Shown here: positions 1 through 51,985 of the stretch, one piece after another
Layout: every line of letters begins with the position of its first letter
How positions within the stretch are numbered: the first letter of the stretch is position 1
DNA from: Macrostomum lignano
Taxonomy: Eukaryota
Direction of reading: 5' to 3'
Length of the DNA stretch: 64,000 bases
Assembly (NCBI GenBank): GCA_002269645.1
Contig: NIVC01000013.1
Span: 682,001-746,000, forward strand
Notes under the pieces: model-generated
What the model was told of the DNA's origin: nothing
The model's input: the letters and a program-made list of their open reading frames with translations, nothing else
Databases searched by the model: none
Position numbers and translations under genes: made by a program

Positions 1-969
1 TGGTAGGTCGTGAAGTCTGTTATTTTACACGTAGCGAGACAGGCATCAACAGTTTGTTTGTTGTGAACAAACACTCGCACAAGGTGAGTGGGCTCATTGT
101 TGCGTTTGGCGATTATGCGGCTGACAGAGATTACTCTCAAACCTGCGTTCTCCTGCAGATGCCGCTTAAAGTCACCGGCCTCGACCTCCGGTGGTACGCC
201 GCGCACCACAAAGGAGTGGACCGCCTGGGTCACCGGTCGCTGCTGCACGGTAGGTCTAGGTCGTAGGTCGGGTCGAGCTCTCGGAAGCCGCCTCGTCACC
301 GGCCCCCCGACAAACTGGGGCTCACGCAGGGGCCCACGCAAGAAAATTTGGTGGTCCTGCGGAGTGGCCGGGAAGACAAAGAAGCCGTCTTCCTGCGAGA
401 GCTTCCTGGTAAGTGTGGCCCGGGCCGACCCTTGAAAGTTGGCCGCGAGCCACCTGAGAAAGTCAATTTGGCTTGCCTCAGCCACAATGTTGAATACTAT
501 CGGTACCACATTATTGTTGCCCCTGTTATTATTAGGCCGTGGTCCTTCCGCTCTTGGAGCTGCCGCCGTGGCAGCATAGGAACGGCGATAGCCGCCCCGC
601 CGCGCACCGACATTTCCGCCGTCGTTGCGCTGGGCTAGAGGGCCGCCGGGACCGCAGGGCCGGACGCGCCGGCCGCCCCGCGATCTGGCTGCCCAGTTCC
701 CGCTGCTGTCCGGGGGCCCGGCGCAGCCAGGCTGGTGCACGCCCCGCCACCGCCAGGCCCTTCCCCGTCGTGTGCAGCTGCTGTTTGGGTTGTGCCTCCG
801 CGTCCCGACGTGGCACTGCCAGGTGGGTGGGTTACTCGAAACGTGAGCGAGATACGAACCCCTTCCTGCATGCGCACCGCCGGGACGCTGTGCTGGCATC
901 TGCGCTGACACCCGCCTGCCATGACAATGACTGAGCCTGGCTCGGTTTTGAAGCGCCCTATGATTCGAT
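1..969 (-). CDS. Non-LTR retrotransposon ORF1-like (gag/RRM-like) region; frame open through the left window edge, so absent from the ORF track
   Basis: My translation of the minus frame has no stop from 969 to 1: ...GARRGGYRRSYAATAAAPRAEGPRPNNNRGNNNVVPIVFNIVAEASQIDFLRWLAANF...QAVHSFVVRGVPPEVEAGDFKRHLQENAGLRVISVSRIIAKRNNEPTHLVRVFVHNKQTVDACLATCKITDFTTY. The SYAA linker and the VVRGVP...L...G..V..V.RI.....PT.LV.V pattern are typical of RRM-like ORF1 domains in I/Jockey/R1-group LINEs (recognised by eye). Confidence 0.7.
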
Positions 970-1400
970 GGTCACTATTACGCCGGACAAGGAAGCTCCG
1001 CACCGCCCCAAGCGACACTGTGGCAATATACGGGTCAGTGCCTAGCTCGGGCTCGTTGTCTGCGTAATACGGTATCATGTCGTCGGCTGTTTCATAAAAA
1101 TTGATAAGGCACGAGTTGAATTTCGGCATGCCGAGGTCAGCGTTGATTTCCAGGAAATCCCGCAGGTCCTCGACAGCCGGGTGCCATGCTTGATTAGGTT
1201 CTAACGGTACACCGGAATAGGAGTAGTTTGGGCCATACCATACTACTCTGCGCTGCTCTTGCGGCCGGTGCCTAATAGCTTTCGGCAGTCGGCGATGAGG
1301 CAGTCGTAGAGCTGCTGGGAGACCGATTCAAGTAGTTTTGGGTAGTACTCTAGTACAACGTCGCCATGATGCTGAATATTCTCCCCGGATCGGTCTGGGT
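635..1400 (-). pseudogene. AlkB-family 2OG-Fe(II) dioxygenase domain, ALKBH2/ALKBH3-like; frameshifted, first Fe-ligand His replaced by Tyr
   Basis: Joined translation: GDVVLEYYPKLLESVSQQLYDCLIADCRKLLGTGRK[1-nt shift near 1258-1262]EQRRVVWYGPNYSYSGVPLEPNQAWHPAVEDLRDFLE...FNSCLINFYETADDMIPYYADNEPELGTDPYIATVSLGAVRSF...GSVIVMAGGCQRRCQHSVPAVRMQEGVRISLTFR. It has the WYG, FNSxLxNxY, (H>Y)xDxE, HSVP and RxSLTFR motifs of ALKBH2/3. Confidence 0.9.
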
Positions 1401-1941
1401 GAACTGGGAAGCCGATGGGATTATGAAGATAGTTTGCTGAATCCGCATTGACCTCGCTGTCCGCAACGTCATTACTATTTGATGTGTCGGATACTTCAGA
1501 TGCCGCAGCTGACTCGGGATCAGGGGCCACAGTACCTGGGTCATCAGCAACCTGGCCGGGTTCCTCTAGTACTGTATCAGAGCCACTTGATGTTGAGGCA
1601 TCCGAGTCGGCTGGGATCTTAACGATCTCAGATTGAACATTGACCGCCGGGTTTGCTAGCACCGGCGAATCGGGAGCCGATGAATGGTCAGACCCAGGTG
1701 TAAGCGTGCTCGGTGCAAGGGGCGGTGTCGTCTTGCTGGACGGGCCAACGGAGGAGCGCCGCCTTTGGGCCGGAGGCACAGATACTCGGCTCATCGTGCC
1801 TCTACTAATTGCTACAACCGAAGAAGATGCACCGGCAGTATTGCTGTTTGACGACCAGTCCGAGGACTGGCGGTTGTTCGCTCTCTTACTCGGCGGCTCA
1901 ACTGCGCCAGCCGATTTTTGGTAGGTTGGTAGTTTAGACAT
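1243..1941 (-). CDS. Ser/Asp/Ala-rich low-complexity N-terminus of the AlkB-containing ORF
   Basis: 232-aa ORF starting at ATG 1941. Its last ~45 aa are the start of the AlkB domain, and it is preceded by AT-rich sequence. Confidence 0.55.
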   Translation of the reverse strand: MSKLPTYQKSAGAVEPPSKRANNRQSSDWSSNSNTAGASSSVVAISRGTMSRVSVPPAQRRRSSVGPSSKTTPPLAPSTLTPGSDHSSAPDSPVLANPAVNVQSEIVKIPADSDASTSSGSDTVLEEPGQVADDPGTVAPDPESAAASEVSDTSNSNDVADSEVNADSANYLHNPIGFPVHPDRSGENIQHHGDVVLEYYPKLLESVSQQLYDCLIADCRKLLGTGRKSSAE

Positions 1942-2599
1942 GCCTAATAAGATAAATATTAAAACTTATTTTTTGGTGTAACCTATGGGGCAAAAAGCAA
2001 GTTAACACCTTTTCAATATTTATTTTATTTCAAGAGGAAGATTGGAAAGCTGCTCAACAACAATTTAATAAATAATATTGATGTATTACAGACCGTCTTT
2101 GTTGTTAAACGGGGTTGAAAAGCCTAGGGGCTTCTGGCAATCAATGGCCAGATAAAAGCAGGGGATAAAACCGCGCTGGGATGCCAGCCCAGAAAAAAAG
2201 AATGGCAGAAAGGAGGAGCACCTGAACCCAACCTAGCAGGCCTGCTACTTAACCTGCTGCCCGGGGCTCAGCCTCAGGGCTGGCATCAACTAGGCTCTAC
2301 CGTACACCTTCGTGAATGGTCATTCTTTCCTGCAGGGCGGGTACTACCGGGGGGCTCAAGTCCAGTTCTAGCCACACTGCAGTCCAGAGTACGCACTAAC
2401 TCCAGGTACACGTCCCTAAACCAAAGCCGAGGGCCGAAATAATTAGAATGAAAAGTAGGGTTATTTTTAGAATGGGCACAGCCCCTCCGGAGCGGACCCT
2501 TAGAAAATTGGGCTAGCCGAAGCCAGGCCAATCGGATTGCGCACAACCCTTAGACAAGCTACCAGAGAGGCAGCCAGGGTAAAAACAGTCAGAGACCGT

Positions 2600-4941
2600 C
2601 TTTGTTGTTGTTAAACGAGGGTGGGGAGCCGGTGGCAACCCGCGGATCAGCCCTGAATTGGGCTCTGCCGCTGAGGGGCACTTCCAGGGGCCTAAGCTCC
2701 ACAAAATCGAGCGTCAGTTCTGCACTGCAGTACATTTCAAGGAAAGCCTGGAGAAGCGTGACGAACTTTTGAAGAGCTGTCACGAATTCTCGCGATAGAA
2801 ACATGATCAGCAGGGCTTCGCCCTTGTATCTAACGATCTTGTGTTTCACATGTTTACACATTGTGTAAGCCGAGCCGTCTTCTTGAAGTCGAAAGTAGAC
2901 AGGATCCAGCAGGTGGTACAGGCGTAGAAATCTGTGCGTAATAATTAAGAGCGAAATCGAGTGAAAGCAGTGCAAAAGTACCGTTATGAAACGCAGCTAA
3001 AACTCAGTGTGTCATCTGACAGACTTATTTTTGGTACACTTCGGGTTATTCAATTGACGAGTATTGAGCAAACTGATATACGAATACATCTTACCGGTAC
3101 GAGTCGTACCTCATGTGCTGAAAACACATGTGGTGGAGCTTCAGATTGGCGCCAAATTTTCTTACATCTTGAAGTGTCAATTGCCTGGAGGACACGTCAA
3201 AGTGAATGACGTCTTGAATCTTCTTCTTCAAAGACGAAGATGCGTACAATGCGGCCATCAGTATCCGACACCACTCTGGACCCTGGTCGCGTCGTCGGTC
3301 GTCTTGGCGGAAGCGACGGCTAGCGATGTTGCCTTGTTTGCCGGCGCGCGCGGTCGGATTGCGTAAAATAACCAAATTTGACTCCAGGAGCTCCTTGCTG
3401 CAATGAAGCTCCTCAAGAAGCTGCTTTGAGGTGGTGGAAGGTCGCAGTTCGACTTCTAGAAGAGCCTAGGCGAGCCACCGCAAGGTTAGTAGTTGCAGTT
3501 GTGAGCTCTTTCCACCGACCCACCACAAAGCTGTTTCCTCAAGGATGTCTAGATCAAACAGGCCGGGAAGATAAATATCACGGCCAAGACCTGCTGCAAT
3601 GCCCCGCCACATCATGTCGAGACGAGACAGCCTTGTCTCCGGAGCTTTGACAGCCGAAACATTTTCGGATGTTTCCAGCTCTTCCTTCCTTACCGGCTCC
3701 ACGCGGATGTCTCGGCCTACGCCAAAGTCGCTGCGGTAGAAACCGGTATCTCTCTTTAGAAAACGAAATAGCTTTTCTCGACGATCGGAGTCTTCCACCT
3801 TTGTCAGCCTTGTCGGATGGACGGTGTTAAATGGCTTCAGCCAGTACGAAAAACTGACTTGGATTTTCCAAAGAATGCTAAATAGTGGCTCTCGCATCTT
3901 GATGTCATGGACGATGGTATACGATGCCACATCGAGGTAATGGTATCTTTCACCATGACTTCCGAAACAGTTTCTTCAGCAACCAATGAACCAGTCCCAG
4001 ATAGCACTGATGTAGTAGACACGGAGGACACCCATGAGTATTGTCGAATCCGTCTAACTGGTCCAACACTGACACCTCCATGACTCCAAGGTAGTTATCT
4101 TTGCCAGTCGGGATGTTACGCGCCAGTAGGTGCGTGTCGTAAAGGCTACGAGCGGTAGGTGTTATACAACCGGCTGCGCTGGCTAGCGCGGCCCCCTCTT
4201 CATGGCCACGAACTGGATACTGTTTGGCGCCCAAGCACCTCTGAGTTTGCACATAGCAATTATCGCAGCCGAACTCTGCGTTGTGACGCTTCAGACCCAT
4301 AACCTCAGCCCTCTGTGGGGCGTCTAAAACAAAGAGATACGGGTGCAGGCGAAGCAGACGCATCACCTCCGGGGCCAACACCAGTGCTGTAAACGATACC
4401 GGTAGACCGGAGCTGGTTTAGCTCTCTGACCAGACAGGGAAGAAATGCTGAAGCTTTCACATTAGATTTGGAGGCCGCAGATGACAATGAAGCGCGATTT
4501 TATGGCTTCATGCACCTCGTTAATGCTCAGGAAAACCGGGCACATTTCCATCAGGGCGTCGTCAAACGCATGAAATCCATCTATGTTTACAGTGTAGGAC
4601 AAATCCTGCTTAAAGTGTCGGTATTCGTCACAGTTGGATATGGACATAAAATTGCGTCCATAGTCTGATGGTTGAACTGGGAATGTTACATTCTGCAGCA
4701 AACGGCAGTTTTCAATGAGCTGCAAGATTTGCCTCTTAAAGTCGGTTTGAAAAATTTTGGGTACATTTGTTGGTGATAGTGTGCCGTTACACTACGGACA
4801 GTTCTGTCGGCTTTGCACCTACGCGGAAGGGACCTCAGCGCTACAGGAAGAGCAGAACATCTGGGGCGCCAACTTAAAGTCGTTTACGAACCCTTCAACG
4901 GATTTGCGCAGCCTGCACACGGTGTGAGGGAAGATGCTACC
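2600..4941 (-). pseudogene. CACTA/EnSpm (CMC) family transposase, 3' part; multiple frameshifts and stops
   Basis: Family motifs occur in order: FCSSC...CP*C; LSYTVNIDGF...CPVFLSINE; FLPCLVRELNQLRSTGI; LDAPQRAEVMGLKRHNAEFGCDNC; LLHQCYLGLVHWLL; FVTLLQAFLEMY; degenerate VEL(R)PL. In-frame TAG at 4819 and 4792; frame changes near 4470 and 4385. Confidence 0.85.
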
Positions 4942-4954
4942 GGGTCCATGAGAA

Positions 4955-5510
4955 ATGCCCGCAGACAAATTGCCCGCCGAGATTTGCCCGCAGGAGATTT
5001 GCCCGCGGAGATTTGCCCGCCGAGCTTTTCCTGCCGAGATTTGCCCGCAGTGCAATTTGCCCGCAAAAGATTTGCCCGCAGGGGGTTTGCCCGCCGAGCT
5101 TTTCCCGCCGTAATTTGCCCGCAATGCAATCTGCCCGCGAGTGAATTGCCCGCCGAGATTTGCCCGCCGAGATTTGCCCGCGGTGATTTGCCCGCCCGCG
5201 AGCGAATTGCCCGCCGAGATTTGCCCGCGAGCGATTTGCCCGCCGAGATTTGCCCGCGAGCGATTTGCCCGCCGAGATTTGCCCGCGAGCGATTTGCCCG
5301 CCGAGATTTGCCGCGAGCGATTTGCCCGCCGAGATTTGCCCGCGAGCGATTTGCCCGCCGAGATTTGCCCGAGCGATTTGCCCGCCGAGATTTGCCCGCG
5401 AGCGATTTGCCCGCCGAGATTTGCCCGCGAGCGATTTGCCCGCCGAGATTTGCCCGCGAGCGATTTGCCCGCCGAGATTTGCCCGCGAGCGATTTGCCCG
5501 CCGAGATTTC
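4955..5510. repeat. Array of ~11-bp GATTTGCCCGC units inside the left MULE TIR
   Basis: Visible tandem array. An inverted, shorter copy lies at ~9670-9940 in the right TIR. Confidence 0.95.
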
Positions 5511-5605
5511 CGCAATGCTTTTTCCTTTAGTGCTGCATTTACTCGTACATGTAGCCTCGCGAGTAGCGACAGATTTGCCTGCATTGCGTTTTGTCAACAC
5601 CCAAT

Positions 5606-5842
5606 GCTAAGTAATGTCATTTTTAATAAAAATATTTAGCCAATCAAATTGCTCCTAATGTCATTTTGCTAAGTAATGTCATTTTTAATAAAAATATTTA
5701 GCCAATCAAATTGCTCCTAATGTCATTTTGCTAAGTAATGTCATTTTTAATAAAAATATTTAGCCAATCAAATTGCTCCTAATGTCATTTTGCTAAGTAA
5801 TGTCATTTTTAATAAAAATATTTAGCCAATCAAATTGCTCCT
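5606..5842. repeat. 62-bp tandem repeat (4 copies) in the left MULE TIR; single copy in the right TIR
   Basis: GCTAAGTAATG starts at 5606, 5668, 5730 and 5792. Confidence 0.95.
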
Positions 5843-6879
5843 GTAGTATACATGTAACTGTATTTCAAATTTCTCTATGCAGATTTTTCTTGTGGGAGAA
5901 GTTTTCATTTCTATAGCGGCACATCAGTGAGCCACATATATTCTATGTAGCTAATGCCCCCCTAGACTAGAGCATGCTCGATGCAATTTTTGGCGCCGCA
6001 GTTGAGATTTTTTCGTGGAAAATGAAAAAAACTAAAAAACTAAAATTCCTTTTGCAACAACTTTTCCACAAATGTGTCTTGTCAATGGAGGAAAGAATAG
6101 AATGGAGTGCTAATCTGAGCCAGTTATTTTTATCTCGCTTGATCTTAACTTTTAACATCCCTTTCCCCCCGTTCATTTCTATTGGCTGAAAGCATATTTT
6201 GATGCGAGCTCATACTATGCTGGGACAGACCTTTCAGAGGGGAACGAAAGCGAAAACGAGACGAAAAATATTTTGTCTATGGCAGTCACGAGCCAATGTA
6301 TGTAGCATACATGTATTAGCTATAATAGTAAAAATGTAGTGAGAAAAGACAGAATACAGTAGAGCTGCTGCTAATTGGGACAAAACAAACATTTTCTACG
6401 CAAAATTGTAATTATTATTTAAACAAAGTAACCGTCGAATACCGTTAAGTGAAATTTTTATAACATGCAAAAATGACAAGGAGATTTATCATTTAATTAA
6501 TTTAGTAGTTTATCATATATTTGTAAGTAGCTTTACTTAATGATAAATCTCCTTAAGTTACAGTACATGTAGTTGAAATTAATGCTGCTATTGAAAATAT
6601 AAGTGTATTATTGCATTCATATAGATGATAGAGGAAATAAGACAGTAGTAGACAGTGGGTATTATCAGATATATATATATATAAAACACACAATTTATAA
6701 TCAAGTGTCAACAATGGGCCAAGGAAAAAAAACAATCGCATCATGTGCATGTAAGCCATATAGGTCAATGTCAACTTAAAATTAATGAATGATAAAATCA
6801 ATTAAACAGGCAGTAGTGTCATAGATGTCATAGTGTCATAGGTGTCAAAGATTTCGATTTTAGTTTAACTCCTACCATA

Positions 6880-7055
6880 CAGTGGCGCAGCCAGGGGGGC
6901 CTGTCTCCTTCCCCTCGAAATTTACCCCCCCCCTAATTCTGGAGAAAAAATTGCTGCTCCCCCTGAAATTCTGGAGAAAAAACCCCGCCCTCCTATACCC
7001 CCTCCTCCGGGTGTTGAATGCCCCCCCCACGAAAAAATTTCTGGCTGCGCCACTG
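6880..7055. mobile_element. hAT-family MITE inserted in the MULE
   Basis: Perfect 15-bp TIR CAGTGGCGCAGCCAG (6880-6894 / 7041-7055). 8-bp TSD CTACCATA at 6872-6879 and 7056-7063. Confidence 0.9.
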
Positions 7056-7410
7056 CTACCATAATTCTTCTCACTTCTTATTTGCCTCAGAATGAATAGG
7101 GAATAGAAAAAGACACAATGAGTTAAAATGAAATTTGAATTTTAAAAACTTGAATTTCTACTTTCATCATTCTAATTTATGTTCTGTTGGGATTTTGTGA
7201 TTTGAATGTTAGGGCACCAACACTAAAAGTTGTTTCCATAGACGGTTTCTGTAAAATCTCAAGCATTAAAATTGGAGTCCTGATAGGGTATAACAAACTA
7301 AGTTAAATTCATTTTGCAACTTAGTAAAATGTAAACTAAACATCTAATAGATATAGTCAGAATTGGAAACTAGTTAACTGCACGTCCAATTCAATTACAA
7401 TCGTTGCGAC

Positions 7411-8876
7411 TCACTTCTTCAAATGATGAGCGATGCCCCTTAGAAATGAACGCAAAGGGAAGTTCGCGGGCAGACCTCCACCTTCACCATTCCTGCGTTG
7501 CGTGACTTCAAGAACCATATCGTCGTTCTGGGCGTACTTTGTCTTCTTCTTAGGAGTTTCACCGGCAGCAGCTCTGGCAATCAATAGTGAATGATGGTCG
7601 ACTTCTTTCTTGAGTTCGTTGATAAGCCGAAACAAATTCGGATTGCTGCAGCCCAGAATTGACTGAAGCCTTCTGTGCCAGGCTTCAACGGAGTTGTTGG
7701 TACGATGCAGTCCATTCAGGGTTCGCTCACGAACGTTCCAGATTGAAGGCGCGAATCGTGGCTGCCGTCTTCTTCCATTAGGTAGCCTCCGACCAATCCA
7801 CTGTGCCTCGAAGTAGTCAGCAGTCGAAATCATGGCCTCAGGGAAGTCGGGAAGCATTATCAACTGATCAAACGCAGCAGGAACGCTATTGAGAGGAACA
7901 AACGCCAGTGCTGAAAGGGAGCGAAGTCAGAGTGACATTTCGCCATCCTCTTCTTCAAGTTGGCCTTTTAACCCTTCAGCAACCGCCCTTCTATAAACGC
8001 ACTGAACAAGGTGAAATAGACAGCCTGTTGGCTCAACGCTAAAGACCTGCTGAACTGCGTTCATATTAGCTCGCTCAAAATCTGACATCCAGCGAATTGG
8101 TCTAATATTTGGCGCTAATTGAAGGATAGCCTCGTAAAGTCGACAATAAGTTGCCTCATTCTTGTTGGGTAGTAAAGCATAGATAAGGGGCCTCACGAAG
8201 CGTTGAATTTCAGCATGGACTGTCACTAGCTGAGCAAAAAGTGGTGGTGAAGCGTCAAATGTGCCATCGGAAAAAAGTCGGTAGCTCCTTGCAAAGCATG
8301 GAGGCTTTCTTCACTACCAAATAATAAAATTCGGTTGTTGTTTTGTCCAGAGTCGTACAGCAAAAATGGTGCACCATTATGCAGACGAAACTCATCTGGT
8401 ATGATGAGCTCGGCAAGGGTGGCCAGCTGTACTGGGAGACCCTGATGGGTCTGTCGAACGTCTTGAACTAGCCGCTTTAGAGTACTCTGGGTTGGAAGGG
8501 CTACGCCAGCAGATTCAGATAACCCATTTGTGTGCTCCGTAACTATATTCGCAGTCGAATTGACGGTGTTTCTGGCATCCGACTTTATCATCCTAATTGC
8601 TTCCAAAACTTGGAACTGAGAACCATCTGGTCCGTGATTGTGGACGTTCAACTGTCGAATTTTAAGACCATTTCGGATGTGAATTCGGGCCGGACAGGGT
8701 CCTAGACGCCGCTCTTCGCACTGCCAGAAGCTTACTTCTATATCGACCGCGCTGGCTCGTTCGAATGTATAATAATATCCTTCGCATGCTGCTTTACGTT
8801 TGCCACGATTTGTTGCACTAAATCGCACAGCGATCGGAGGAGCTTCCATATTATTTGTCAATAGCAAGTTGAGCAA
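7411..8876 (-). pseudogene. MULE transposase with N-terminal FLYWCH zinc finger; one frameshift and one in-frame stop
   Basis: FLYWCH: GYYYTF...FWQCEERRLGPCPARIH...HNHGP. Catalytic core: TDFF[shift in T6 run ~8270]DGTFDASPPLFAQLVTVH...YALLPNKNEATY...MSDFERANMNAVQQVF...GCLFHLVQC...EMSL*LRSLSALAFVP (TGA at 7927-7929)...YFEAQW...RTNNSVEAWHRRL. Confidence 0.93.
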
Positions 8877-9952
8877 TCAAATAGATTCAGTTAATTCCAG
8901 AATCCAGACAAACTATTTATTGGGCTTATATACTTGTAAGAAGGCAATCAATAAAAGCCCAAACAGCTATAGCTTAAGGAGAGGACGAGACCCATACGGT
9001 TTTTATTACCATAGGGTGATCGACTTTAGAAAAAGGGGTGGGGGTATGGGCCTCTGTGGGTAAGGTGGTCTGTGCTGGGGCAGAGGGCCTAGGGAACACC
9101 AGCCCAGCGGGGCAATCTTAGTAGGCAGAGGGAAGAGGGAAAGTGTACATTGACAATGTACAATGAGCGCCGAACACTCAACATTGGATAAGGACAAGAA
9201 AGCAATCTTCTGACCTTGATCTTGGATGGGTTTTATAACTTTAATACTATCGTAACTTTATAGTATTGATACGAAACGTGACTTGCGGATGGATAAACAG
9301 GTGTATTTCGTGTATGAATCACCTTGTTTTGTGTGTGTCTGTGGTCAGCAAAAGTCGAACTTTGCGACCCAAACGCGGCGCCAAAAATTGCATTGAGCAT
9401 GCTCTAGTCTAGGGGGCTACATAGAATATATGTGGCTCACTGATGTGCCGCTATAGAAATGAAAAATTCTCCCACAAGAAAAATCTGCATAGAGAAATTT
9501 GAATACAGTTACATGTATACTACAGGAGCAATTTTATTGGCTGAATATTTTTATTAAAAATGACATTACTTAGCATTGGGTGTTGACAAAACGCAATGCA
9601 GGCAAATCTGTCGCTACTCGCGAGGCTACATGTACGAGTAAATGCAGCACTAAAGGAAAAAGCATTGCGGAAATCTCGGCGGGCAAATCGCTCGCGGGCA
9701 AATCTCGGCGGGCAAATCGCTCGCGGGCAAATCTCGGCGGGCAATTCGCTCGCGGGCGGGCAAATCACCGCGGGCAAATCTCGGCGGGCAAATCTCGGCG
9801 GGCAATTCACTCGCGGGCAGATTGCATTGCGGGCAAATTACGGCGGGAAAAGCTCGGCGGGCAAACCCCCTGCGGGCAAATCTCCTGCGGGCAAATTGCA
9901 CTGCGGGCATATCTGGGCGGGCAATTTGTCTGCGGGCATTTCTCGTGCTCCC

Positions 9953-10571
9953 GATGCTACCGACAGGCAAAGCGATATCTAGGAGCTTAAGCAGATCAGT
10001 TATTCCTTTTCTGGATAAGGACTGCCGCGTCACTAAACAGTTGGATGTACGCAGCTAAGAAGTTGTGAGTCAATGCAGAGCCAAGAAACACTGCAGCCCC
10101 ATTTCTCCTGCCTGGATGCATGGCGACATCAGCAGCACCAGCATCATCATCAGCATCATCGTCGTCACAGCCACACGGATCTAGATCTTCGGCAGATATA
10201 GGCGCAACGCCCCAATAGTCGCCATCTGGATCAACGACCATGTGCTGTACATCTTCATCATCGGAGTAGTTCGAGCCAACAGGCTCGATTGTCTCCTGCA
10301 TCGTGACACCGCCAGTCTCACTTGGCGCTCCTGCATTGCTGCCCGTTGCTAAATTGCCACTCTCTTCGTCGGGATCCACGACAATAGGCTGCTCATCAGA
10401 TCCAGCTGGCTCCACCGCCCCCGACTGCGTCTGGACACTGCAGGTCTTGTCGGTGACACTGCTGCCGTTAGCCGCACTGCTACCTGACGCCACCGGCTTG
10501 GTCGTACCAGCAGGCTCCACCGCACCCGCATACGCTTGACGACCGTTACCAGTAGCAGCAGGTTTGACATC
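9953..10571 (-). pseudogene. CACTA/EnSpm transposase, 5' part (acidic low-complexity segment plus LSRKGITDLLKLLDIALP motif)
   Basis: Removing 4942-9961 restores the continuous frame ...TDLLKLLDIALPVGSIFPHTVCRLRKSV..., matching the dll.l...lP..n.lP N-terminal motif. Possible splice acceptor (AATAG) at 10572. Confidence 0.75.
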
Positions 10572-12379
10572 CTATTAGAGAAACTGATACCTCAATGGAT
10601 GCAATGACATCATATTAGAGACACTGATACCTCACTATATGCACTGGCATCCCGTTGAAACCCTGATACATCCAGTGAGTAGACTGATATCCTACTACAG
10701 ACCTCGATACCTCACGGTACGCGAAAAAACCGACGGCGAGAAAAGCAAATAATTTGCGAAATAAAAAAAATTATTTGTGTCGTCGGAACATTGTAAAAGT
10801 GTAAATTTTCCATAGGATCGACGTCGGGTGTGTCAGTAATATCGGCGGGTATCGGAATCTTCTTCGGTAGGAGACTCTGACATCCCTCTGAGAAAGTTCA
10901 AGCCCAAGATTACCCTGACATCCTTCTAGTGGGGCACTGAAATCTCACTCCAGACTCTCAACTGAAATTGTGTTGTGTAAGCCGGATCGCAACTCTAGCT
11001 ATCTCAGCGGACGAGCCCAGAGATGGCGTCAGTCAACTGGCCGACTGACTTCGGACTCTGAACGTGAGATCGCGTCAGGAGACCTGGTCAGTCCGTCCCT
11101 ATGGCGCAAATCAAACTCAGCCAGTCGCACAATATAGAAAGAAACGCGACTTATTATTGTCTTCACACAACGGCGATGGCGGCAGCAGGGGTGGATTCTC
11201 TCAAATTCTGGCAGTGAGAGCTTCTAGGTAAAGATTGATTTTCAGTTGTAGTTGTTGCGGAGTTAGTAGCTGAGCCTAGATCGGTACGAAGGTGGCCTCT
11301 ACTACCGCCGCTCATGAATACACACATATATACTCGTATATTTGCGCTGACTGGGTAAGTCCTAAGGTATTGCTACCCCAGGCCCAGCTAGCCAAAATTA
11401 CAAGACTTGCAAATTACAGAGCGCGACGGGGTCACGATTGGAGGAGATTAATAGTAAAGCTGGGTCGGAGCTCACGTATGCACGTACATCTGCACGTATC
11501 AGGAGGTCAATATTTGGATACAGTAAAATGTATGGTAAAATGTTAGGACTGGTGCCATCTCTTTGTTTAAATAGACAACGTGCTAAATTGGATTAAAAGC
11601 TGCGCAATATTTTGACGATAAGACGGACGGGCCGTGGCTGTTTTTCTTGATAGTGAGGTCGGGGGGTTTTGAAAACTATTCTCTGCTGGGCTCCTTGAAA
11701 TTCGTTCGTTCTCGTCCGTTCGAATCGGTGCGCTTTGTCGTTTCAAACAAACTTGGCGAAGATTTCGGCTTGTAGATGACGGGGAGCTCCGCTGCTGAGT
11801 TCCTCAGGCTCAGGGGGGGGGGGGTAGCTGTGGTCGCGGCTGAGCGGTCTAGTATGCCGACGTTCAGAAGGCCGAATGCAGAGATTTGTAGCCGATGAGG
11901 GGCACTTCAAAATAAACTAAAATTTCTCGAGAGTGTTACTAATAGTAGTAGGTCGCTGCCACCACCGCGATTTTACGCGGGAAATGCTCTAAAGCTGGAA
12001 ACTAGCTCGAGTTTGCTCTAGCGCTTCTCGATGGACCTCTAAGGGTCAAAATAAAGTGCTTCCGAGGTCACGAAGGTAAGACACCGTTTCACACACAGAA
12101 CTAAATGGGCCGGTATAAATATTTGGCCGAAAACTGGGTAATTATTATTATTATGCGGCACTAAGTTAAGTAGCAAGATTAAGTATAACAAAACAATTCG
12201 CTTAATTATTAGACTTAAATTGGTGGACGAGGAGCTGGTCGGGTCGGGATACTGGGCTTACAAGATAGGGGCCTCTCGTGGTCTGAGTCGGGTCGGCGGG
12301 ATTCCTTGGAGTTCGGGCAAAGGACACGAGAGTCTGGCTGGAAAGGCGGGCGCAGACTCTTAAATTAGGTTCTTAAGGA

Positions 12380-19943: not shown

Positions 19944-22900
19944 ATGTCTGGATTGGAAGTGGCCGCTTTCGGCGTGCTGTTCGTGTTTGTAGTTAGCAGC
20001 ATTGTCTATCTGCTGTTTAAACGCGCCCCTGGTCACAAAGAAGTTATGGGGGCTGCGTTGAGCTCCGGCGCTGCAGCTTCCAGCTCCAAGAAGGACGCTA
20101 ATAAAAAGAAAACCAATAAGAAAAAAAGAAGAAAAGAAAGAGAAAAGAGCTGCTGCGGCTCCTGCTGTTTCTTCAACGGACAAAAAATCAGAAGAAACTC
20201 CCATTATTGCAAAGACAGTTGCTTTCGTGGAGCCTCCGCAGCAGCAGCAGCCACCTCCGGCATCAAAGAAAGTCTCAGCCGCAGATAGTAGCAAAGCCGA
20301 TAAGAAGAGCAGCCAGCCAGCTTCGTCATCGGTATTGCGTCATCGTAAGCTGGCTGCGCCAAACACAGCTGCTGCTCCGGCTCCACCGCCAGAGCCCGTG
20401 AACTTGGCCGGCTTCACTCCGGTGGCCAGCAAGAAGAGTTTGAAAGCTCAGGCTCAGCAAAAAGCTCAGCACCAGGTGGAGGCTGACCAATCGAAACTAG
20501 CCAATGAAAAGCCTCAGGCTAATGAGAAACCTCAGCAACAGAAGCCTCAGGCTAATGAGAAACCTCAGCAACAAAAGCTTCAGGCTAATGAGAAGCCTCA
20601 GCAACAGAAGCTTCAGGCTAATGAGAAGCCTCAGCAACAGAAGCTTCAGGCTAATGAGAAACCTCAGCAACAGAAGCTTCAGGCTAATGAGAAGCCTCAG
20701 CAACAGAAGCTTCAGACTAATGAGAAGCCTCAGCAACATAAGCTTCAGGCTAATGAGAAGGCTCAGACTAACGCAAAGTCTCAGCCGCAGCAGCGTCAAG
20801 CCAAGCCGCAGGCTCAGCTAAAACCAACCGAAGTAGATTCGGATAGGCCAGCATCGCCAACCCAGGAGGCCCTGGCTCTGGTTAAACGGACCAGCGGCTG
20901 TCGAATCGACGCGCTGGTTGAAGCTCTCGGCGCCTGTCCAACTTCTAAGCTTGATGCCCTTCGCGCCGAACTCGAATCCACCCGCCGTAGACTAGCCGAG
21001 GCTAGCGTTCGCGTTGCCGCTGCCCAGTCTGAGGCCCAATCAGCTGGCCAGCTCAAGCAAGAGCTGCAAAGATTGCGCGCTTCTAGCCAGGGCGCCACCC
21101 TGATGCAGCAGGAATTCAGCAAGAAGATCGCCGAGTTGCGCTCCGCCGAGGCCGAGATCGCCCGCCTGAAGGAGGCCCTGGCGGCGGCTGTCAACGGCGA
21201 GGCCGTGACGCGGTCGGCCGCCGACGAGGCTCGTCGACGCACCGAAGGCGCCGCAGTTCGTGATGGCTACGAGGCGGCTGTTGAAGCTCGCGAGATGGAC
21301 GAACTGCGGAAGAAGAACGATGTAAGTGCTATGAGTTTGTGCCAGCCTCCCAGATCCTCAGTTGATGGGCCAGCCTCCCAGATCCTCAGTTGCTGGGCCA
21401 GCCTCCCAGATCCTCAGTTGCTGGGCCAGCCTCCCAGATCCTCAGTTGCTGGACCAGCCTCCCATATTCTCAGTTGCTGGGCCAGCCTCCCAGATCCTCA
21501 GTTGCTGGGCCAGCCTCCTAGAGTGTCAGTTGCTGGGCCAGCTTCCCAAATCCTCAGTTGCTGGGCCAGCTTCCCAAATCCTCAGTTGCTGGGCCAGCTT
21601 CCCAAATCCTCAGTTGCTGGGCCAGCTTCCCAAATCCTCAGTTGCTGGGCCAGCTTCCCAAATCCTCAGTTGCTGGGCCAGCCTCCCAGATGCTCAGTTG
21701 CTGTTCACCCTGCCTATGTAATAATTATTTGTGTTTCATTAATGACTAAATCTATCTCTAACTACTTAACATTGTCTTTAATAGCTTAGGCTAGAATTTA
21801 GCTTGTTCTTGTCGATACTGTTTCATCAGATACACAGAGGGCAATGTTCCTACCGAATTGTATCTTGGTATTATTCTTATCCCAGAGCCTGCAGTCGGAG
21901 CTGCAGAAGGCGACCAACAGGGCAGACGCAGCCCAATCGGAGGTGGCCCGCGAGCGCCGGAGTATGTCCGAGGTGCAGTCGAAACTGGCCGAAGCTGTCC
22001 AACGATTGGACGCCTCTAGCAAGGAGGTGTCGGCTCTGCAGACTGCTCTGGCACAGAAAGATGCCCAAGTGAAGCGGCTTGAGCAGCAACAGCAGCAGCA
22101 GCAGCAAGCTCCGAAGCGTCAACAGAGAAAATCATCGTCAAACAGCAACGACGAAGAGCTGGCAAATCTGCGAATTAAAAACAATGAGCTGCGCGAGAAG
22201 AATTGGAAATTAGTTGATGCGCTCAAGCAGGCCGAGGAGAGAGCGGATAATTACCGACGCGAGGCTGACAGTCGGAAGCAGCAACAGCAGCAGCAGCCGG
22301 CTGACAATGCCGTGGCAACTGTTGCTTTGGAAGAGCAGCGGGCTAAAAATAACGAATTGCGACAGAAGAACTGGGAGCTGGCGGACAGTTTGAGCGCTAA
22401 TGAGAAACGAGCCGAGCAGTTGTCTGGCGAGTTGGCCAAGTATAAATTGGCTCTTGAGTATTCGGAAGGTGTGCTTAAAAAACTAGAAGCCTCCGTTGAA
22501 GAAGAAGAGGCTCGTTGGAAATCCGCCCTGTGCGCTTCAGAAGCCGATGTTGAAAAGTACAAAGCCGCCCTGGCGTCCGCTGTTAGCGAGCTGCGTCGCT
22601 ACAGGGGGTCTTCAAATGATGTAAGCCCGGTTGCTTTTCTATTAATCTCCAAATGTTTAGAATTTCCCAAGTAAGAATGATTGCTTTATACACTCTCTGA
22701 TATCGATTTTTTTAGGATTTGACCGACCTGAATTTTGCCTATCATTGCGTTGAGAAGTCTCTGACTAACATTGTTGACGAGGTTTGTTCGCCTTCTCATT
22801 ATTAGAGCATCAATGTACTTTGTAGTGACTTTGAGATAACACTCTAGATTGTGGTGTGTGACTTTGAGATAACACTCTAGATTGTGGTGTGTGACTTTGA

Positions 22901-26902: not shown

Positions 26903-29900
26903 TGACTGAAGGCATGCGCTCTATTCTATCTATCTAAGAGCGGCAAACCATTACAATGCTATATTTCGGCAGCGGGTTGGGCAATAGTTCAATGATTTGA
27001 TATTCAGTCCTATCACATCCTGCATCGCAGCTTTCACTGTTCGTCACTTTTTCAGTATTCTATTGACATCTAGATACAACGTGTTTCAAAGTATTTATTT
27101 AAAACTTGATTTTTTGCGTAATTATCACTGACTTAATCAGGCGATTAGCAGGTAAAAGCTGGTATATTGGTTGAGCCCGGTCGCGTCCTCAATATTTTTG
27201 GCATTCCAAAAATAAAAAAATAGTTTTGCAATGCTGTTTGTGCGCAGTATCCACATTTTGTTGGATTACGCAATTCAACAGTCTTCAATTGTTTATTCCC
27301 TAATTACCTGAATGTTTCGCATTTGCAGGCAAGACGAGAGAGCACTAGCTCCAAGGATGAGACTGGTGCAGTGAGTATATTTGCATTATTTAGGCACGGA
27401 TCATTTCATAAACCTTGTCAGTATTTGGTGTAGTATGTTTGCTTTACTTGTCGAAACTGTCTCTGATTTCCTTAATTACCTTCAATATTTATATTGTGCT
27501 GGACTTATCTTCTAATTTCACTTCAAATATGGGTTTTTATTATTCACATACTGTTCGCTTAACTCTTGCCAGTTTTTGTGTCGGTCTGTCAGAATTTATG
27601 CAAGCTAGACTCTGTTCTTCAATCAATTTGAATTTGGCGATATTGATTTATCGGCTTAGAAAATTATTTTCCTAGTTTATGTTATGATTCTATACTTGAA
27701 TAAACCATTGAACCCTAGTGAACTGACCCATTGACCCAATGACCCAGGTGGATTGACCCATGGACCCAGATGGATTGACCCATTGACGAAATGACCCAGG
27801 TGGACTGACCCATTGACCCATTAACACAGGTGGATTGACCCATTGACCCAGGTGGATTAACCAAATGACCCAGGGTAATTGACCCAATGATCTAGGTTCC
27901 AGGTTGATTGACCCAGAAACCCAGCTGGACTGACTCAATGACCCTGTTGTATTGACTCAATGACTCAGGTTCCTGGATGATTGACCCAGGTTCCAGTGTG
28001 ATTGACCCAATGACCCACGTTCCAGGTGATTGACCCAGTGACCCAGGTTCCAGGTTGATTGACCCAGTGACCCAGGTTCCAGGGTGATAGACCCACTGAT
28101 CCAGTTGAATTGACCCATTGACCCATGATCCAACTTCGATTTATGAGTAAACAATCGCAAGCTCGTAGTTAAATTTTTGCAATCCTACTGATTACAAAGG
28201 CGGATGTACTCCAGGGTTCCTGTACGTTTGTCTTACTCTGATATATGCACTTAATTACTCTTAGTGTAGTTTCATTTAGTTAAAATCAATGTCTATCTGG
28301 CACATATTACATGTATTTAACATTCTATAAATGTTAATGTGATTACAACGATTTCTTCTCATACAGTTGAGTTGAATTCAGTATCAATGTGTTTCGTGTA
28401 ATCTTTGTTTCTGAGCTTGCACCAGAGCCTACCGTCTTCAGTGCTCAAAATCGCAACAGAGGAACAGTTCTGTGCGTTCACCCTTGTCGCGTGTGCTTCG
28501 TGTGAAATCGGAATTGCGCTCTTGTCTTGCTTTAGCGCGTGTGTAGTTATTATTAATTTGTGCGCTCACTTGGAGCTACGAGCTCGAATATATATATAGA
28601 TTACTGAGTTAACAGTTCACTGGGGTTCTTTGTTTTTGCTTTGGAAATATGAATACAAACTGATATAGATAGGCGGGCGGACTGGCAGACAGACAGACCG
28701 ACAAACACACAGAAGACAGACAGACAGACACACAGAAGACAGAATGACAGGCAGGCAGACAGACAGACAGACACACAGAAGACAGACAGACACACAGAAG
28801 ACAGACAGACACACAGAAGACAGAATGACAGGCAGGCAGACAGACAGACAGACACACAGAAGACAGAATGACAGGCAGGCAGACAGACAGACAGACAGAC
28901 ACACAGAAGACAGAATGACAGGCAGGCAGACAGACAGACAGACACACAGAAGACAGACAGACAGACACACAGAAGACAGAATGACAGGCAGGCAGACGGA
29001 CACACAGAAGACAGAATGACAGGCAGGCAGACAGACAGACAGACAGACACAGAAGACAGAATGACAGGCAGGCAGACAGACAGACAGACACACAGAAGAC
29101 AGACAGACAGACAGACAGATACACAGAAGACAGAAGACAGGCAGACAGACAGACAGACACACAGAAGACAGACAGACAGACACACAGAAGACAGACAGAC
29201 AGACACACAGAAGACAGAATGACAGGCAGGCAGACAGACAGACAGACACACAGAAGACAGAATGACAGGCAGACAGACAGACAGACAGACACACAGAAGA
29301 CAGAATGACAGGCAGGCAGACAGACAGATACACAGAAGACAGGCAGGCAGACAGACAGACAGACACACAGAAGACAGACAGACAGACACACAGAAGACAG
29401 AATGACAGGCAGGCAGACAGACAGACAGACACACAGAAGACAGAATGACAGGCAGGCAGACAGACAGACACACAGAAGACAGAATGACAGGCAGGCAGAC
29501 AGACAGACAGACACACAGAAGACAGACAGACAGACACACAGAAGACAGAATGACAGGCAGGCAGACAGACAGACACACAGAAGACAGAATGACAGGCAGG
29601 CAGACAGACAGAGGCGGCGGTAGACAGACAAACCAGGGGCTCTAAGACAGACAGGCAAACAGACAACACTAAGACAGAAAGGAGAATGAAATATGTTAGC
29701 TAAAATCTTCCAATGCCGAAAATTTACATGTAGGTAGCGATTAGAAATATCAAGTATTAAATTTTACTGCGAGTTCACCTCAGCCAATGTAAGTATACTT
29801 ACACTTACGCCTTTGATCTGTGATCTGTAAAACAGTTTGAAAATGCCCAACTGAAATTCAATTTTGACAAGTAAAGAATTGTTTTACTGCTTTTAATTTG

Positions 29901-36851: not shown

Positions 36852-48930
<12,079 letters not shown>

Positions 48931-51108: not shown

Positions 51109-51526
51109 TCAAAAGGCACCAAGTCTACCATATCGCCGCACTAAATCAGAAAGATTTAAACAAAAAACAAATTTATAAATTAAAACTTACGTTCTCAAAG
51201 GTGTGATTGCTGTTTTAAATGGCCACGGTTGAAAATATTTGCTGAGACCTGCAGGGATTGAAGCAGTCGTAGTCGGCAATTTATAAAAGTTGTTTTTCAA
51301 CTGAAATTCTATTTGCAATTCGAATTTTTGACAAAAGCGATTAAATTTTTGTACTAGTCTCCATTCCTATCATTAACTTCAATAAAAATCTAACAAGTAT
51401 GCTGCCTCACTTCTTTGACATCAGCGATACAAACCCTTTAAAAGCTTTTCAATAAGAATGACGGTTCAAAAGTTTGAGATATGTACATATACAAGCAATG
51501 TTTTTAAAAAATAAAACAGATCACAG

Positions 51527-51985
<459 letters not shown>

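What the first reader, a model, noticed from the sequence alone, without database searches (positions are those of the whole stretch)
1..1941. Retrotransposon ORF1 that appears to carry its own AlkB (ALKBH2/3-type) nucleic-acid demethylase
Seen: one intronless minus-strand unit running low-complexity N-terminus, complete AlkB fold, Gly/Arg linker, SYAA motif, LINE-type RRM/gag region (open off the left edge). It is interrupted only by frame changes near 1260 and somewhere in 640-850. Established: AlkB enzymes remove m1A/m3C (some m6A) from RNA or ssDNA, and several plant RNA viruses carry AlkB domains thought to protect their genomes. Inference: this LINE family captured an AlkB domain that may repair or demethylate its own RNA or cDNA inside the RNP, a possible counter-defence. 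I cannot tell from here whether this fusion has been catalogued.
Basis: partly seen in the sequence, partly recalled or inferred. Interest (0 to 1): 0.85.

Follow-up and report, generated by a model that had tools for sequence, protein, structure and literature searches.

The report
LINE ORF1 with built-in AlkB demethylase
The left end of the window holds a decayed copy of an invertebrate (probably flatworm) LINE retrotransposon whose RNA-binding ORF1 protein has an ALKBH3-type nucleic-acid demethylase fused to its front; intact relatives keep this fusion conserved, and I found no description of it for any non-LTR element.

Summary
On the minus strand of 1-1941 lies one intronless unit. It has an ATG at 1941, a low-complexity N-terminus, a complete AlkB domain (PF13532, E 2.7e-22; closest solved relative human ALKBH3), a Gly/Arg linker and an SYAA motif. 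Two RRM folds follow and run off the left edge. Corrections: the first frameshift is near 1288, not 1260, and the catalytic His is Tyr here, so this copy is dead.

An exhaustive search of 1.84 billion proteins found only nine clusters with this RRM module. Seven of them also carry the AlkB domain or its C-terminal end. Four are intact 757-962 aa ORFs: AlkB (HxD...H and RxNLTFR intact), two RRMs and three CCHC knuckles. In four independent contigs, including Macrostomum lignano, an endonuclease or endonuclease-RT ORF2 follows directly. The AlkB domain is as constrained as the RRM-knuckle core.

The likeliest function is removal of m1A/m3C-type methyl groups from the element's own RNA or cDNA so that reverse transcription can proceed. 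This is inferred, not shown. The only transposon precedent I found is an orchid Ty3/Gypsy element. I rate it a new variant of a known kind.

The parts
1939..1941 (-). ORF1 start codon (ATG), first start after an in-frame stop
1366..1941 (-). Low-complexity Ser/Pro/Ala/Asp-rich N-terminal region of ORF1 (about 190 aa). It is not conserved between families.
821..1365 (-). Complete ALKBH3-like AlkB (2OG-Fe(II) dioxygenase) domain, read in frame 0 and then frame 2
   Evidence: PF13532 E 2.7e-22. Human ALKBH3 E 4e-24. A profile of six TE AlkBs covers positions 4-184 of 185 against ALKBH3, E 1.7e-39.
1285..1291 (-). Frameshift 1 (frame 0 to frame 2), inside the N-terminal part of the AlkB domain
   Evidence: Comparison with P0013/L003: LITDLLPQAFQHRPSEQRR versus window LIAD|LPKAIRHRPQEQRR
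1064..1066 (-). TAC (Tyr) codon at the position of the first Fe(II)-binding His of the HxD motif. This substitution should inactivate the enzyme. The next Asp (HxDD) is Asn.
890..892 (-). Second Fe(II)-binding His (CQHSVP), retained
836..856 (-). RISLTFR, the 2-oxoglutarate-binding Arg motif (RxNLTFR of ALKBH3), retained
597..820 (-). Gly/Arg/Ala/Pro-rich linker containing frameshift 2 (frame 2 to frame 1, somewhere in 815-637; frame-2 stop at 637-635)
   Evidence: P0001 has a Gly/Arg-rich linker at the same place.
570..581 (-). SYAA motif (RRSYAATAAA)
   Evidence: The same motif sits before the RRMs in P0001 and after the knuckles in P0005, P0006, P0007 and P0010.
270..503 (-). RRM-like domain 1 of ORF1
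   Evidence: AF2 pLDDT above 90 over this part, beta-alpha-beta-beta-alpha-beta topology. Foldseek top hits are tandem-RRM proteins.
3..221 (-). RRM-like domain 2 of ORF1, cut by the window edge near its last strand. The CCHC knuckles and ORF2 expected from relatives would lie beyond position 1.
1942..2095 (-). AT-rich stretch directly upstream of the ATG. It is a candidate short 5' UTR; the boundary is not established.
2096..2630 (-). Two copies of GTTTAACAACA(ACA)AAGACGGTCT (2096-2124 and 2602-2630) bracket a ~490-bp segment. The motif resembles the 3' end of the M. lignano AlkB-LINE, so this may be the 3' end(s) of a preceding element lying head-to-tail. Tentative.

Best explanation
**Identity (about 0.95).** Window 1-1941 (minus strand) is the 5' part of a degenerate copy of a non-LTR (LINE) retrotransposon. 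Its ORF1 protein is a Type I ORF1 (two RRMs followed, in intact relatives, by three CCHC knuckles). It has gained an ALKBH3-like Fe(II)/2-oxoglutarate dioxygenase domain at its N-terminal side. This copy is inactive: it has two frameshifts and the catalytic His is replaced by Tyr. Intact relatives are complete two-ORF LINEs.

**Mechanism (inferred, about 0.5).** ORF1p coats the element's own RNA in cis, which tethers the AlkB domain to that RNA. The domain then oxidatively removes N1-methyladenine, N3-methylcytosine and similar Watson-Crick-face methyl groups from the single-stranded template, and possibly from the nascent single-stranded cDNA. These lesions or marks stall reverse transcriptases, so clearing them would raise the yield of full-length target-primed reverse transcription.

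**What is shown:** domain identities, the fusion in one ORF, ORF2 downstream, conserved catalytic residues, and stronger constraint on AlkB than on the linkers.

**What is inferred:** enzymatic activity, the substrate, action in cis, and the benefit to retrotransposition.
For: - **AlkB identity.** PF13532 scores E 2.7e-22. ALKBH3 is the best solved relative for the window alone. For a profile of six TE AlkBs the ranking is ALKBH3 1.7e-39, ALKBH2 5.5e-29, E. coli AlkB 6e-7. An AF2 model of an intact member (pLDDT 87, pTM 0.86) superposes on human ALKBH3 bound to 3mC ssDNA at TM 0.87.
- **RRM identity.**
- **Fusion is recurrent.** An exhaustive HMMER search with the RRM module found 9 clusters in 1.84e9 proteins. 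Seven of them carry AlkB or its C-terminal end in the same ORF. Four are intact, with HxD, the second His and RxNLTFR conserved, and with three CCHC knuckles.
- **LINE identity.** In L001, ORF1 (1752-4283) is followed by ORF2 (4710-7556) with Exo_endo_phos_2 and RVT_1. L005 and L009 have an endonuclease-type ORF2 starting right at the ORF1 stop. M. lignano L003 has endonuclease-like and RT ORFs downstream.
- **Constraint.** Between families, the non-synonymous difference in AlkB (pN 0.20 and 0.25) is no higher than in the RRM-knuckle core (0.23 and 0.26). It is half that of the linker (0.44).
- **AlkB-less relatives exist.** Relatives of the same ORF1 without AlkB exist (P0010; P0011, which has an endonuclease ORF2 downstream). 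This indicates a domain gain.
- **Established knowledge.** AlkB, ALKBH2 and ALKBH3 reverse 1-meA and 3-meC in RNA and DNA, and plant-virus AlkB domains repair RNA (PMC2553587). Base modifications interfere with cDNA synthesis by reverse transcriptases (PMC12140624 abstract).
Against: - The window copy is cut by the window edge, so its own knuckles and ORF2 are unseen. The window holds no ORF2-like sequence and no second copy.
- Its closest relative (P0001, 52% identity) has no contig on record. Membership of this particular family in a two-ORF LINE is therefore by homology only.
- The M. lignano family is seen as head-to-tail tandem arrays on two contigs, at 99% identity. Dispersed, recently retrotransposed copies were not demonstrated.
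- Synonymous sites are saturated, so a proper dN/dS is not available.
- There is no biochemical evidence. The ALKBH3-like assignment does not fix the substrate.
- The host organisms of the Logan contigs are unknown.
Confidence: 0.8

Rival explanations
1. The AlkB domain is an eraser of a regulatory RNA mark (m6A, or programmed m1A) that the host deposits on LINE transcripts to trigger decay or silencing. On this reading it is an epitranscriptomic counter-defence rather than damage repair.
For: The only TE precedent found is an orchid Ty3/Gypsy AlkB with demonstrated m6A demethylase activity (PMC9289625). m6A writers and erasers modulate mammalian L1 (PMC7873242).
Against: The domain is ALKBH3-like by sequence and fold, not ALKBH5-, ALKBH9B- or FTO-like. 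From established knowledge, ALKBH3's main substrates are m1A and m3C. Nothing here tests the substrate.
Confidence: 0.2
2. The domain acts on DNA rather than RNA. It would repair alkylated single-stranded DNA at the nicked target or in the first-strand cDNA during target-primed reverse transcription.
For: ALKBH3 prefers single-stranded nucleic acids, including ssDNA. The best structural matches are ALKBH3-ssDNA complexes.
Against: ORF1p RRMs and knuckles tether it primarily to the RNA. No evidence separates RNA from DNA substrates. This is compatible with the best explanation rather than exclusive of it.
Confidence: 0.15
3. The AlkB fold is retained as a non-catalytic nucleic-acid-binding or scaffolding module of ORF1p.
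For: The window copy lacks the first iron ligand.
Against: All five other TE AlkBs examined keep HxD, the second His and both 2OG-binding Arg residues. 44 columns are invariant across those five sequences, which include three lineages only 37-45% identical to each other. The window copy's loss goes together with frameshifts, which is decay.
Confidence: 0.07
4. It is a host ALKBH3 retro-pseudogene or host gene lying next to an unrelated LINE ORF1 fragment by chance, or a domesticated host gene that is no longer a transposon.
For: There is only one copy in the window, and the downstream part is unseen. The M. lignano copies sit in tandem arrays, which amplification without retrotransposition could also produce.
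Against: The same order (AlkB, linker, two RRMs, three knuckles) occurs in one ORF in several lineages only 30-60% identical to each other. Each is followed by an endonuclease or endonuclease-RT ORF2.
Confidence: 0.03

Closest known systems
Type I LINE ORF1 proteins (RRM(s) plus CCHC knuckles; subtype IB = two RRMs plus three knuckles, Jockey lineage; Khazina & Weichenrieder classification as summarised in PMC4120745)
   Same: Two RRM folds are followed by three CCHC knuckles in intact relatives. The ORF sits directly upstream of an endonuclease-RT ORF2 with no RNase H hit in Pfam.
   Different: It has an additional ~185-aa AlkB dioxygenase domain N-terminal to the RRMs. None of the domains catalogued for 448 Jockey-superfamily ORF1s (RRM, CCHC, PHD, coiled coil, CTD, esterase, zinc finger/leucine zipper) is an AlkB; the paper has no occurrence of 'AlkB' or 'oxygenase'. 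The RT clade of these elements was not determined here.
Human ALKBH3 (m1A/m3C demethylase of ssDNA and RNA)
   Same: 38-44% identity over the catalytic core. Full-length profile match at E 1.7e-39. TM 0.87 to PDB 8jnr. HxD...H and RxNLTFR are conserved in intact TE copies.
   Different: It is encoded inside a retrotransposon ORF1 and fused to RRMs and knuckles. It lacks the Pro/Glu-rich insertion of ALKBH3 between two core strands. Activity and substrate are untested. The window copy has Tyr in place of the first His.
AlkB domains of plant RNA viruses (Flexiviridae and others; PMC2553587)
   Same: A selfish RNA-templated replicon carries its own AlkB, which is thought to keep its single-stranded genome free of methyl lesions.
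   Different: Those are domains of RNA-virus replicase polyproteins in plants. Here the domain sits in the RNA-packaging protein of an animal retrotransposon that must be reverse-transcribed.
Orchid (Phalaenopsis) Ty3/Gypsy elements with an AlkB ORF (PMC9289625)
   Same: It is a retrotransposon-encoded AlkB-family dioxygenase, proposed to act on the element's own RNA.
   Different: That is an LTR element in plants. Its AlkB lies in an additional separate ORF and is ALKBH5/9B-like, with m6A demethylase activity. Here the element is a non-LTR element in an animal, and the AlkB is ALKBH3-like and fused in-frame to ORF1.
Esterase-type (Type IV) ORF1 of CR1/L2 LINEs (PMC3905857)
   Same: It is a precedent for an enzymatic fold recruited into a LINE ORF1.
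   Different: That domain is a lipid-directed SGNH esterase, not a nucleic-acid-modifying enzyme.

Membership tests
AlkB / ALKBH3-like 2OG-Fe(II) dioxygenase | Significant match to the AlkB family profile (PF13532) above the curated cut-off | tested here: met
   Window: 80.4 bits against a cut-off of 31.2, E 2.7e-22. Relatives: 70-108 bits.
AlkB / ALKBH3-like 2OG-Fe(II) dioxygenase | Double-stranded beta-helix fold with nucleotide-recognition lid, superposable on ALKBH3 | tested here: met
   AF2 model of an intact member built with the family alignment: pLDDT 87.4, pTM 0.86. Top PDB hits are ALKBH3 at TM 0.87, rmsd 2.4 A. The window copy aligns over the full domain.
AlkB / ALKBH3-like 2OG-Fe(II) dioxygenase | Fe(II) facial triad HxD...H | tested here: not met
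   The window copy has Y-A-D in place of H-S-D (codon 1066-1064); the second His is present. All five other TE AlkBs examined keep the triad. The family meets this feature; this copy does not.
AlkB / ALKBH3-like 2OG-Fe(II) dioxygenase | 2-oxoglutarate-binding Arg pair (RxNLTFR) | tested here: met
   RISLTFR at 856-836. It is invariant in all members.
AlkB / ALKBH3-like 2OG-Fe(II) dioxygenase | Oxidative demethylation of m1A/m3C in single-stranded nucleic acid | not testable with these tools
   This needs a biochemical assay.
Non-LTR (LINE) retrotransposon | ORF2 with apurinic-type endonuclease and reverse transcriptase downstream of ORF1 | tested here: inconclusive
   It cannot be seen for the window copy: it would lie beyond position 1, there is no ORF2-like sequence in the window, and the contig could not be extended. 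It is met in relatives L001, L003, L005, L009 and L014.
Non-LTR (LINE) retrotransposon | Type I ORF1: RRM fold(s) | tested here: met
   Two RRM-like units, pLDDT 84. The Foldseek top 50 are all tandem-RRM proteins.
Non-LTR (LINE) retrotransposon | Type I ORF1: CCHC zinc knuckles after the RRMs | tested here: inconclusive
   They would lie beyond the window edge for this copy. Three knuckles are present in P0004-P0007, P0009 and P0010.
Non-LTR (LINE) retrotransposon | Multiple copies, including truncated or decayed ones | tested here: inconclusive
   There is one copy in the window. M. lignano has at least five near-identical copies, but they sit in two tandem arrays, plus the diverged copy P0001 (P0004's organism was not established). 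Identical ORF1s occur in contigs from several sequencing runs. Dispersed insertions with target-site duplications were not shown.
Non-LTR (LINE) retrotransposon | Assignment to a named RT clade (Jockey, CR1, L2, I ...) | not tested
   No reference RT set was available. The only indirect hints are the Type I ORF1 and an ORF2 without an RNase H hit in Pfam.

The most novel reading that the evidence does not exclude
An animal LINE lineage encodes, within its RNA-coating ORF1 protein, an active ALKBH3-type demethylase that clears m1A/m3C-type methyl groups from its own template or cDNA. This would mean that base methylation of retrotransposon RNA, whether chemical damage or a host-installed mark, is a real and selectable barrier to target-primed reverse transcription. 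It would also make these elements a natural, genetically tractable test of that idea, since Macrostomum lignano can be made transgenic (my own knowledge).
Probability: 0.5. Interest if true: 0.8.

Novelty: new variant of a known kind. Interest (0 to 1): 0.7.

Why it matters
LINE ORF1 proteins are thought of as RNA chaperones and packaging proteins. The only enzymatic domain catalogued in them so far is a lipid esterase. A nucleic-acid demethylase fused in-frame to ORF1, kept with intact catalytic residues across lineages only 37-45% identical, argues that methylation of the Watson-Crick face of LINE RNA or cDNA limits retrotransposition enough to be worth a dedicated enzyme.

This links three fields: alkylation repair, epitranscriptomics and transposon-host conflict. 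It parallels AlkB capture by plant RNA viruses and by an orchid LTR element, which suggests convergent solutions in unrelated selfish replicons.

Practically, such ORF1-AlkB proteins would be natural RNA-tethered demethylases. The M. lignano database entries for them (a 'Fe2OG dioxygenase domain-containing protein', an 'HTH La-type RNA-binding domain-containing protein' and three 'hypothetical protein' records) would be better annotated as transposon proteins.

Tried and rejected
1. **Word-indexed protein searches.** The fused conceptual protein returned only P0001 plus two unrelated AlkBs. The RRM module alone returned nothing. A family alignment returned only the two AlkB-less relatives. The word index evidently misses this family. 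The exhaustive HMMER search was what worked.
2. **Extending the window leftwards.** I looked up the two complete window ORFs in the assembly index. Neither is on record.
3. **P0001's contig.** Not on record.
4. **Nucleotide similarity.** None between the window and any fetched locus, so no family consensus or age estimate for the window copy was possible.
5. **Metagenome scan.** The RRM-knuckle alignment found 17 other Type I ORF1 LINEs. None has an AlkB upstream.
6. **Identifying the organisms behind the Logan runs.** A full-text search for the run accessions gave no hits.
7. **Literature.** Searches for AlkB in non-LTR elements found only the orchid Gypsy case and mammalian host-factor work. 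Repbase was not searchable.
8. **dN/dS.** Synonymous sites are saturated, so only the contrast in pN between domains is usable.
9. **Small ORFs between ORF1 and ORF2.** L001 and L007 each have a 123-124 aa ORF there, but the two are not similar to each other and have no Pfam hit. I rejected them as a conserved gene.
10. **Rfam.** It finds nothing in 1-3000.
11. **'Complete but frameshift-free host gene' reading.** Rejected because of the two frame changes, the absence of introns and the relatives' architecture.
Full report
**1. What is in the sequence**

Reading the minus strand from 1941 downwards, an ATG at 1941-1939 opens a 232-codon frame. It is the first start after an in-frame stop.

- **N-terminus.** The first ~190 residues are low-complexity, rich in Ser, Pro, Ala and Asp.
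- **AlkB domain.** From about 1365 the translation is an AlkB domain. Pfam PF13532 (2OG-FeII_Oxy_2) matches at E 2.7e-22, 80 bits against a curated cut-off of 31. The best solved relative is human ALKBH3 at E 4e-24, ahead of ALKBH2 at 7e-12 and E. coli AlkB at 1.5e-3.
- **First frame change.** The domain is broken by one frame change. Comparison with the M. lignano relative places it at about 1288, directly after ...LIAD. From there, frame 2 reads LPKAIRHRPQEQRRVVWYGP against the relative's LLPQAFQHRPSEQRRVYWIGP.
- **Linker and second frame change.** The AlkB domain ends with RISLTFRVTHPP (856-821). A Gly/Arg/Ala/Pro-rich linker follows. All three frames are open there, so the second frame change can only be bracketed to 815-637.
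- **C-terminal module.** Frame 1 then gives RRSYAATAAA (SYAA at 581-570) and a ~170-residue module that runs off the left edge.

**2. What the C-terminal module is**

Pfam does not recognise this module. AlphaFold2, given a ten-sequence family alignment, models it at mean pLDDT 84.4 as two beta-alpha-beta-beta-alpha-beta units joined by a disordered loop. Foldseek against the PDB returns only tandem-RRM proteins in its top 50, including HuR, Pub1, Sex-lethal, hnRNP A1 UP1 and NONO, each at probability 1.0. The low TM scores reflect different inter-domain orientations. The second RRM is cut by the window edge.

**3. State of this copy**

Besides the two frame changes, the first iron ligand of the HxD motif is Tyr (TAC at 1066-1064) and the following Asp is Asn: PYYADNE versus WHSDDE.

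| Region | Columns invariant in the other family members | Window agrees |
|---|---|---|
| AlkB | 44 | 40 |
| RRM module | 15 | 14 |

There are no in-frame stops in the frame segments used.

This is a moderately decayed, inactive copy. I cannot exclude that the two indels are assembly errors, but the His-to-Tyr change would still inactivate the enzyme. The window holds no other copy and no ORF2-like sequence. The window's host genes are innexins, so the genome is from an invertebrate.

**4. Relatives**

The word-indexed protein search was nearly blind to this family. It did give one key hit, P0001 from Macrostomum lignano. P0001 carries the end of AlkB (RISLTFRV), a Gly/Arg linker, SYATAAA and the same RRM module in one ORF.

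The exhaustive HMMER search of 1.84 billion cluster representatives, using the window's RRM module, found only nine clusters.

- **Intact AlkB-bearing ORFs.** P0005 (757 aa), P0006 (962), P0007 (843) and P0009 (892) are intact single ORFs. Each has a variable N-terminus, an AlkB domain (PF13532, E 1e-28 to 1e-31), a linker, two RRMs, three CCHC knuckles, SYAAA (absent in P0009) and a C-terminal tail.
- **Truncated AlkB-bearing ORFs.** P0004 and P0008 are N-truncated versions that keep the AlkB end.
- **AlkB-less relatives.** P0010 and P0011 have the RRM-knuckle module with only ~30 residues in front and no AlkB.
- **Known sources.** Cluster look-up shows that P0008, P0013 and P0014 are M. lignano proteins (PAA54534.1, PAA49615.1, PAA54535.1). 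P0001 is UniRef100_A0A1I8G3B4, also M. lignano. The intact ones come from Logan assemblies of runs SRR31628392 to SRR31628437, whose organism I could not identify.

**5. These are LINEs**

| Locus | Source | ORF1 | What follows |
|---|---|---|---|
| L001 (9.1 kb) | Logan | 1752-4283 | 948-aa ORF2 at 4710-7556, Exo_endo_phos_2 + RVT_1, no RNase H hit |
| L005 | Logan | ends 3587 | endonuclease-type ORF2 begins at the ORF1 stop |
| L009 | Logan | ends 3110 | endonuclease-type ORF2 begins at the ORF1 stop |
| L003 | M. lignano | 6158-8299; frame change in the knuckle region, ORF continues 7900-8652 | endonuclease-like ORF 8739-9287 (no Pfam hit; similar to the endonuclease region in L014) and RT ORF 9489-11546 |
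| L014 | JGI metagenome | AlkB-less relative P0011 | endonuclease ORF2 |

The architecture of two RRMs plus three CCHC knuckles upstream of an endonuclease-RT ORF2 is Type I (subtype IB) in the Khazina-Weichenrieder scheme as summarised by Metcalfe and Casane (PMC4120745). I could not assign the RT clade.

**6. Is the AlkB part a working, selected part of the element?**

- **Catalytic residues.** All five other TE AlkBs examined keep HxD, the second His and the RxNLTFR arginines.
- **Family assignment.** A profile of six TE AlkBs matches ALKBH3 over its whole length at E 1.7e-39, ALKBH2 at 5.5e-29 and E. coli AlkB at 6e-7.
- **Fold.** An AlphaFold2 model (pLDDT 87.4, pTM 0.86) superposes on human ALKBH3 bound to 3mC ssDNA at TM 0.87.
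- **Divergence.** The three TE sub-lineages are 37-45% identical to each other and 38-44% identical to human ALKBH3. The fusion is therefore old, or the domain was acquired more than once.
- **Constraint.** The table gives Nei-Gojobori non-synonymous differences (pN) between family pairs.

| Family pair | AlkB | RRM-knuckle core | Linker |
|---|---|---|---|
| P0005 / P0006 | 0.20 | 0.23 | 0.44 |
| P0007 / P0009 | 0.25 | 0.26 | 0.44 |

Synonymous sites are saturated, so this is a relative statement: AlkB is at least as constrained as the canonical ORF1 core.

- **AlkB is not general to Type I ORF1.** Seventeen further Type I ORF1 LINEs from metagenomes show no AlkB upstream. The domain is specific to this small group.

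**7. How it most likely works (inference)**

Three pieces of established knowledge bear on this.

- AlkB, ALKBH2 and ALKBH3 reverse 1-methyladenine and 3-methylcytosine in DNA and RNA by oxidative demethylation, and plant-virus AlkB domains do this on RNA (PMC2553587).
- ORF1 proteins bind their encoding RNA (abstracts listed).
- Base modifications impede cDNA synthesis by reverse transcriptases (PMC12140624 abstract).

Putting these together, an ORF1p-tethered ALKBH3-like enzyme would strip RT-blocking methyl groups from the single-stranded template, and perhaps from the first-strand cDNA, inside the RNP. I put this at about 0.5.

The alternatives are erasure of a regulatory mark such as m6A as counter-defence (as for the orchid element, PMC9289625), action mainly on ssDNA, or a non-catalytic role. 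The conserved active site argues against the last of these.

**8. Comparison with what is known, and novelty**

- Virus- and transposon-borne AlkB domains are known in plant RNA viruses (PMC2553587).
- They are also known in one orchid Ty3/Gypsy lineage, where the AlkB lies in a separate ORF, is ALKBH5/9B-like and removes m6A (PMC9289625).
- Enzymatic ORF1 domains are known in LINEs in the form of the esterase (PMC3905857).
- I found no report of AlkB in a non-LTR element or in an animal transposon. Repbase and subscription journals were not searchable, so prior cataloguing cannot be excluded.

I therefore rate it a new variant of a known kind. The window's own copy is a dead member; the interest lies in the family.

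**9. Limits**

- The window copy's knuckles and ORF2 are unseen, and the contig could not be extended.
- The organism of the window and of the Logan runs is not established. Macrostomum or a related flatworm is likely, because the named relatives are all from M. lignano.
- The M. lignano family occurs as head-to-tail arrays with a ~6.45-kb period at 99% identity on two contigs. Recent dispersed retrotransposition is therefore not demonstrated.

Noticed in passing
window 2096-2630 (minus strand), compared with L003 5640-5670 and 12095-12125: The motif GTTTAACAACA(ACA)AAGACGGTCT occurs twice just upstream of the ORF1 start (2 matches versus 0.2 expected) and brackets a ~490-bp GC-rich segment. 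The M. lignano AlkB-LINE ends its 3' UTR with a very similar string (CCTCGTTTTAACAACAAAGA). The window copy may therefore lie head-to-tail behind the 3' end(s) of related elements.
   Followed up: partly
L013 (M. lignano NIVC01002892.1, 86081-107289) and L003 (NIVC01003829.1): The M. lignano AlkB-LINE is arranged in head-to-tail tandem arrays. There are three copies in L013 and at least two in L003, with a period of ~6.45 kb and 99% identity. After the last copy in L003, a junction-like string recurs ~120 bp further on without an element. This could reflect site-specific or self-targeted insertion, or tandem amplification.
   Followed up: partly
L001 4346-4717; L007 3269-3643; L008 3177-3551: A 123-124-aa ORF lies between ORF1 and ORF2 in two AT-rich AlkB-LINE families. 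It has no Pfam hit, and the two versions are not similar to each other, so it is probably not a conserved gene.
   Followed up: yes
window 36852-37322, 42456-43052, 58739-59434 (all minus strand): Three ORFs match the Innexin family (PF00876, E 4e-27 to 1e-48). They look like exons of at least two innexin genes, and they show that the window comes from an invertebrate animal.
   Followed up: partly
window 7411-8876 (minus strand): Two adjacent ORFs, one with a FLYWCH zinc finger (PF04500, E 4e-10). The other contains a '...NSVEAWHRRLQ...' stretch that recalls MULE-type transposases (from memory; no Pfam hit). Probably a DNA-transposon remnant.
   Followed up: partly
window 3950-4381 (minus strand): A 143-aa ORF (…HNAEFGCDNCYVQTQ…) with no Pfam hit lies 2 kb upstream of the AlkB-ORF1 copy. 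It is possibly another transposon-derived gene.
   Followed up: no
window 4813-5904; 28600-29670; 39536-40534; 41352-42505; 44266-44878; 45163-46966; 47253-47958; 51466-52031; 55732-56851; 57204-57854: The window holds an unusually dense set of long micro- and minisatellite arrays, which produce spurious long ORFs in several frames. Examples are 29-nt and 62-nt periods at 4.9-5.9 kb and (GTCT/GACA)n-like arrays elsewhere.
   Followed up: no
window 20227-22674 (+) and 31681-32577 (+): There is a long ORF pair encoding a Gln/Ala-rich coiled-coil-like protein with QANEKPQQQK repeats. Its C-terminal 'PPRSSVAGPASQILSCWASLPDPQLLGQ' repeat recurs as a separate array about 10 kb away.
   Followed up: no
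window 54351-54420 (+): Single tRNA match (Rfam RF00005, 35 bits, above the gathering score).
   Followed up: no
P0001 and P0013 (database records): The M. lignano proteins carrying this fusion are named 'HTH La-type RNA-binding domain-containing protein' and 'Fe2OG dioxygenase domain-containing protein' in UniRef, and 'hypothetical protein' in NCBI. They are not flagged as transposon ORF1.
   Followed up: yes
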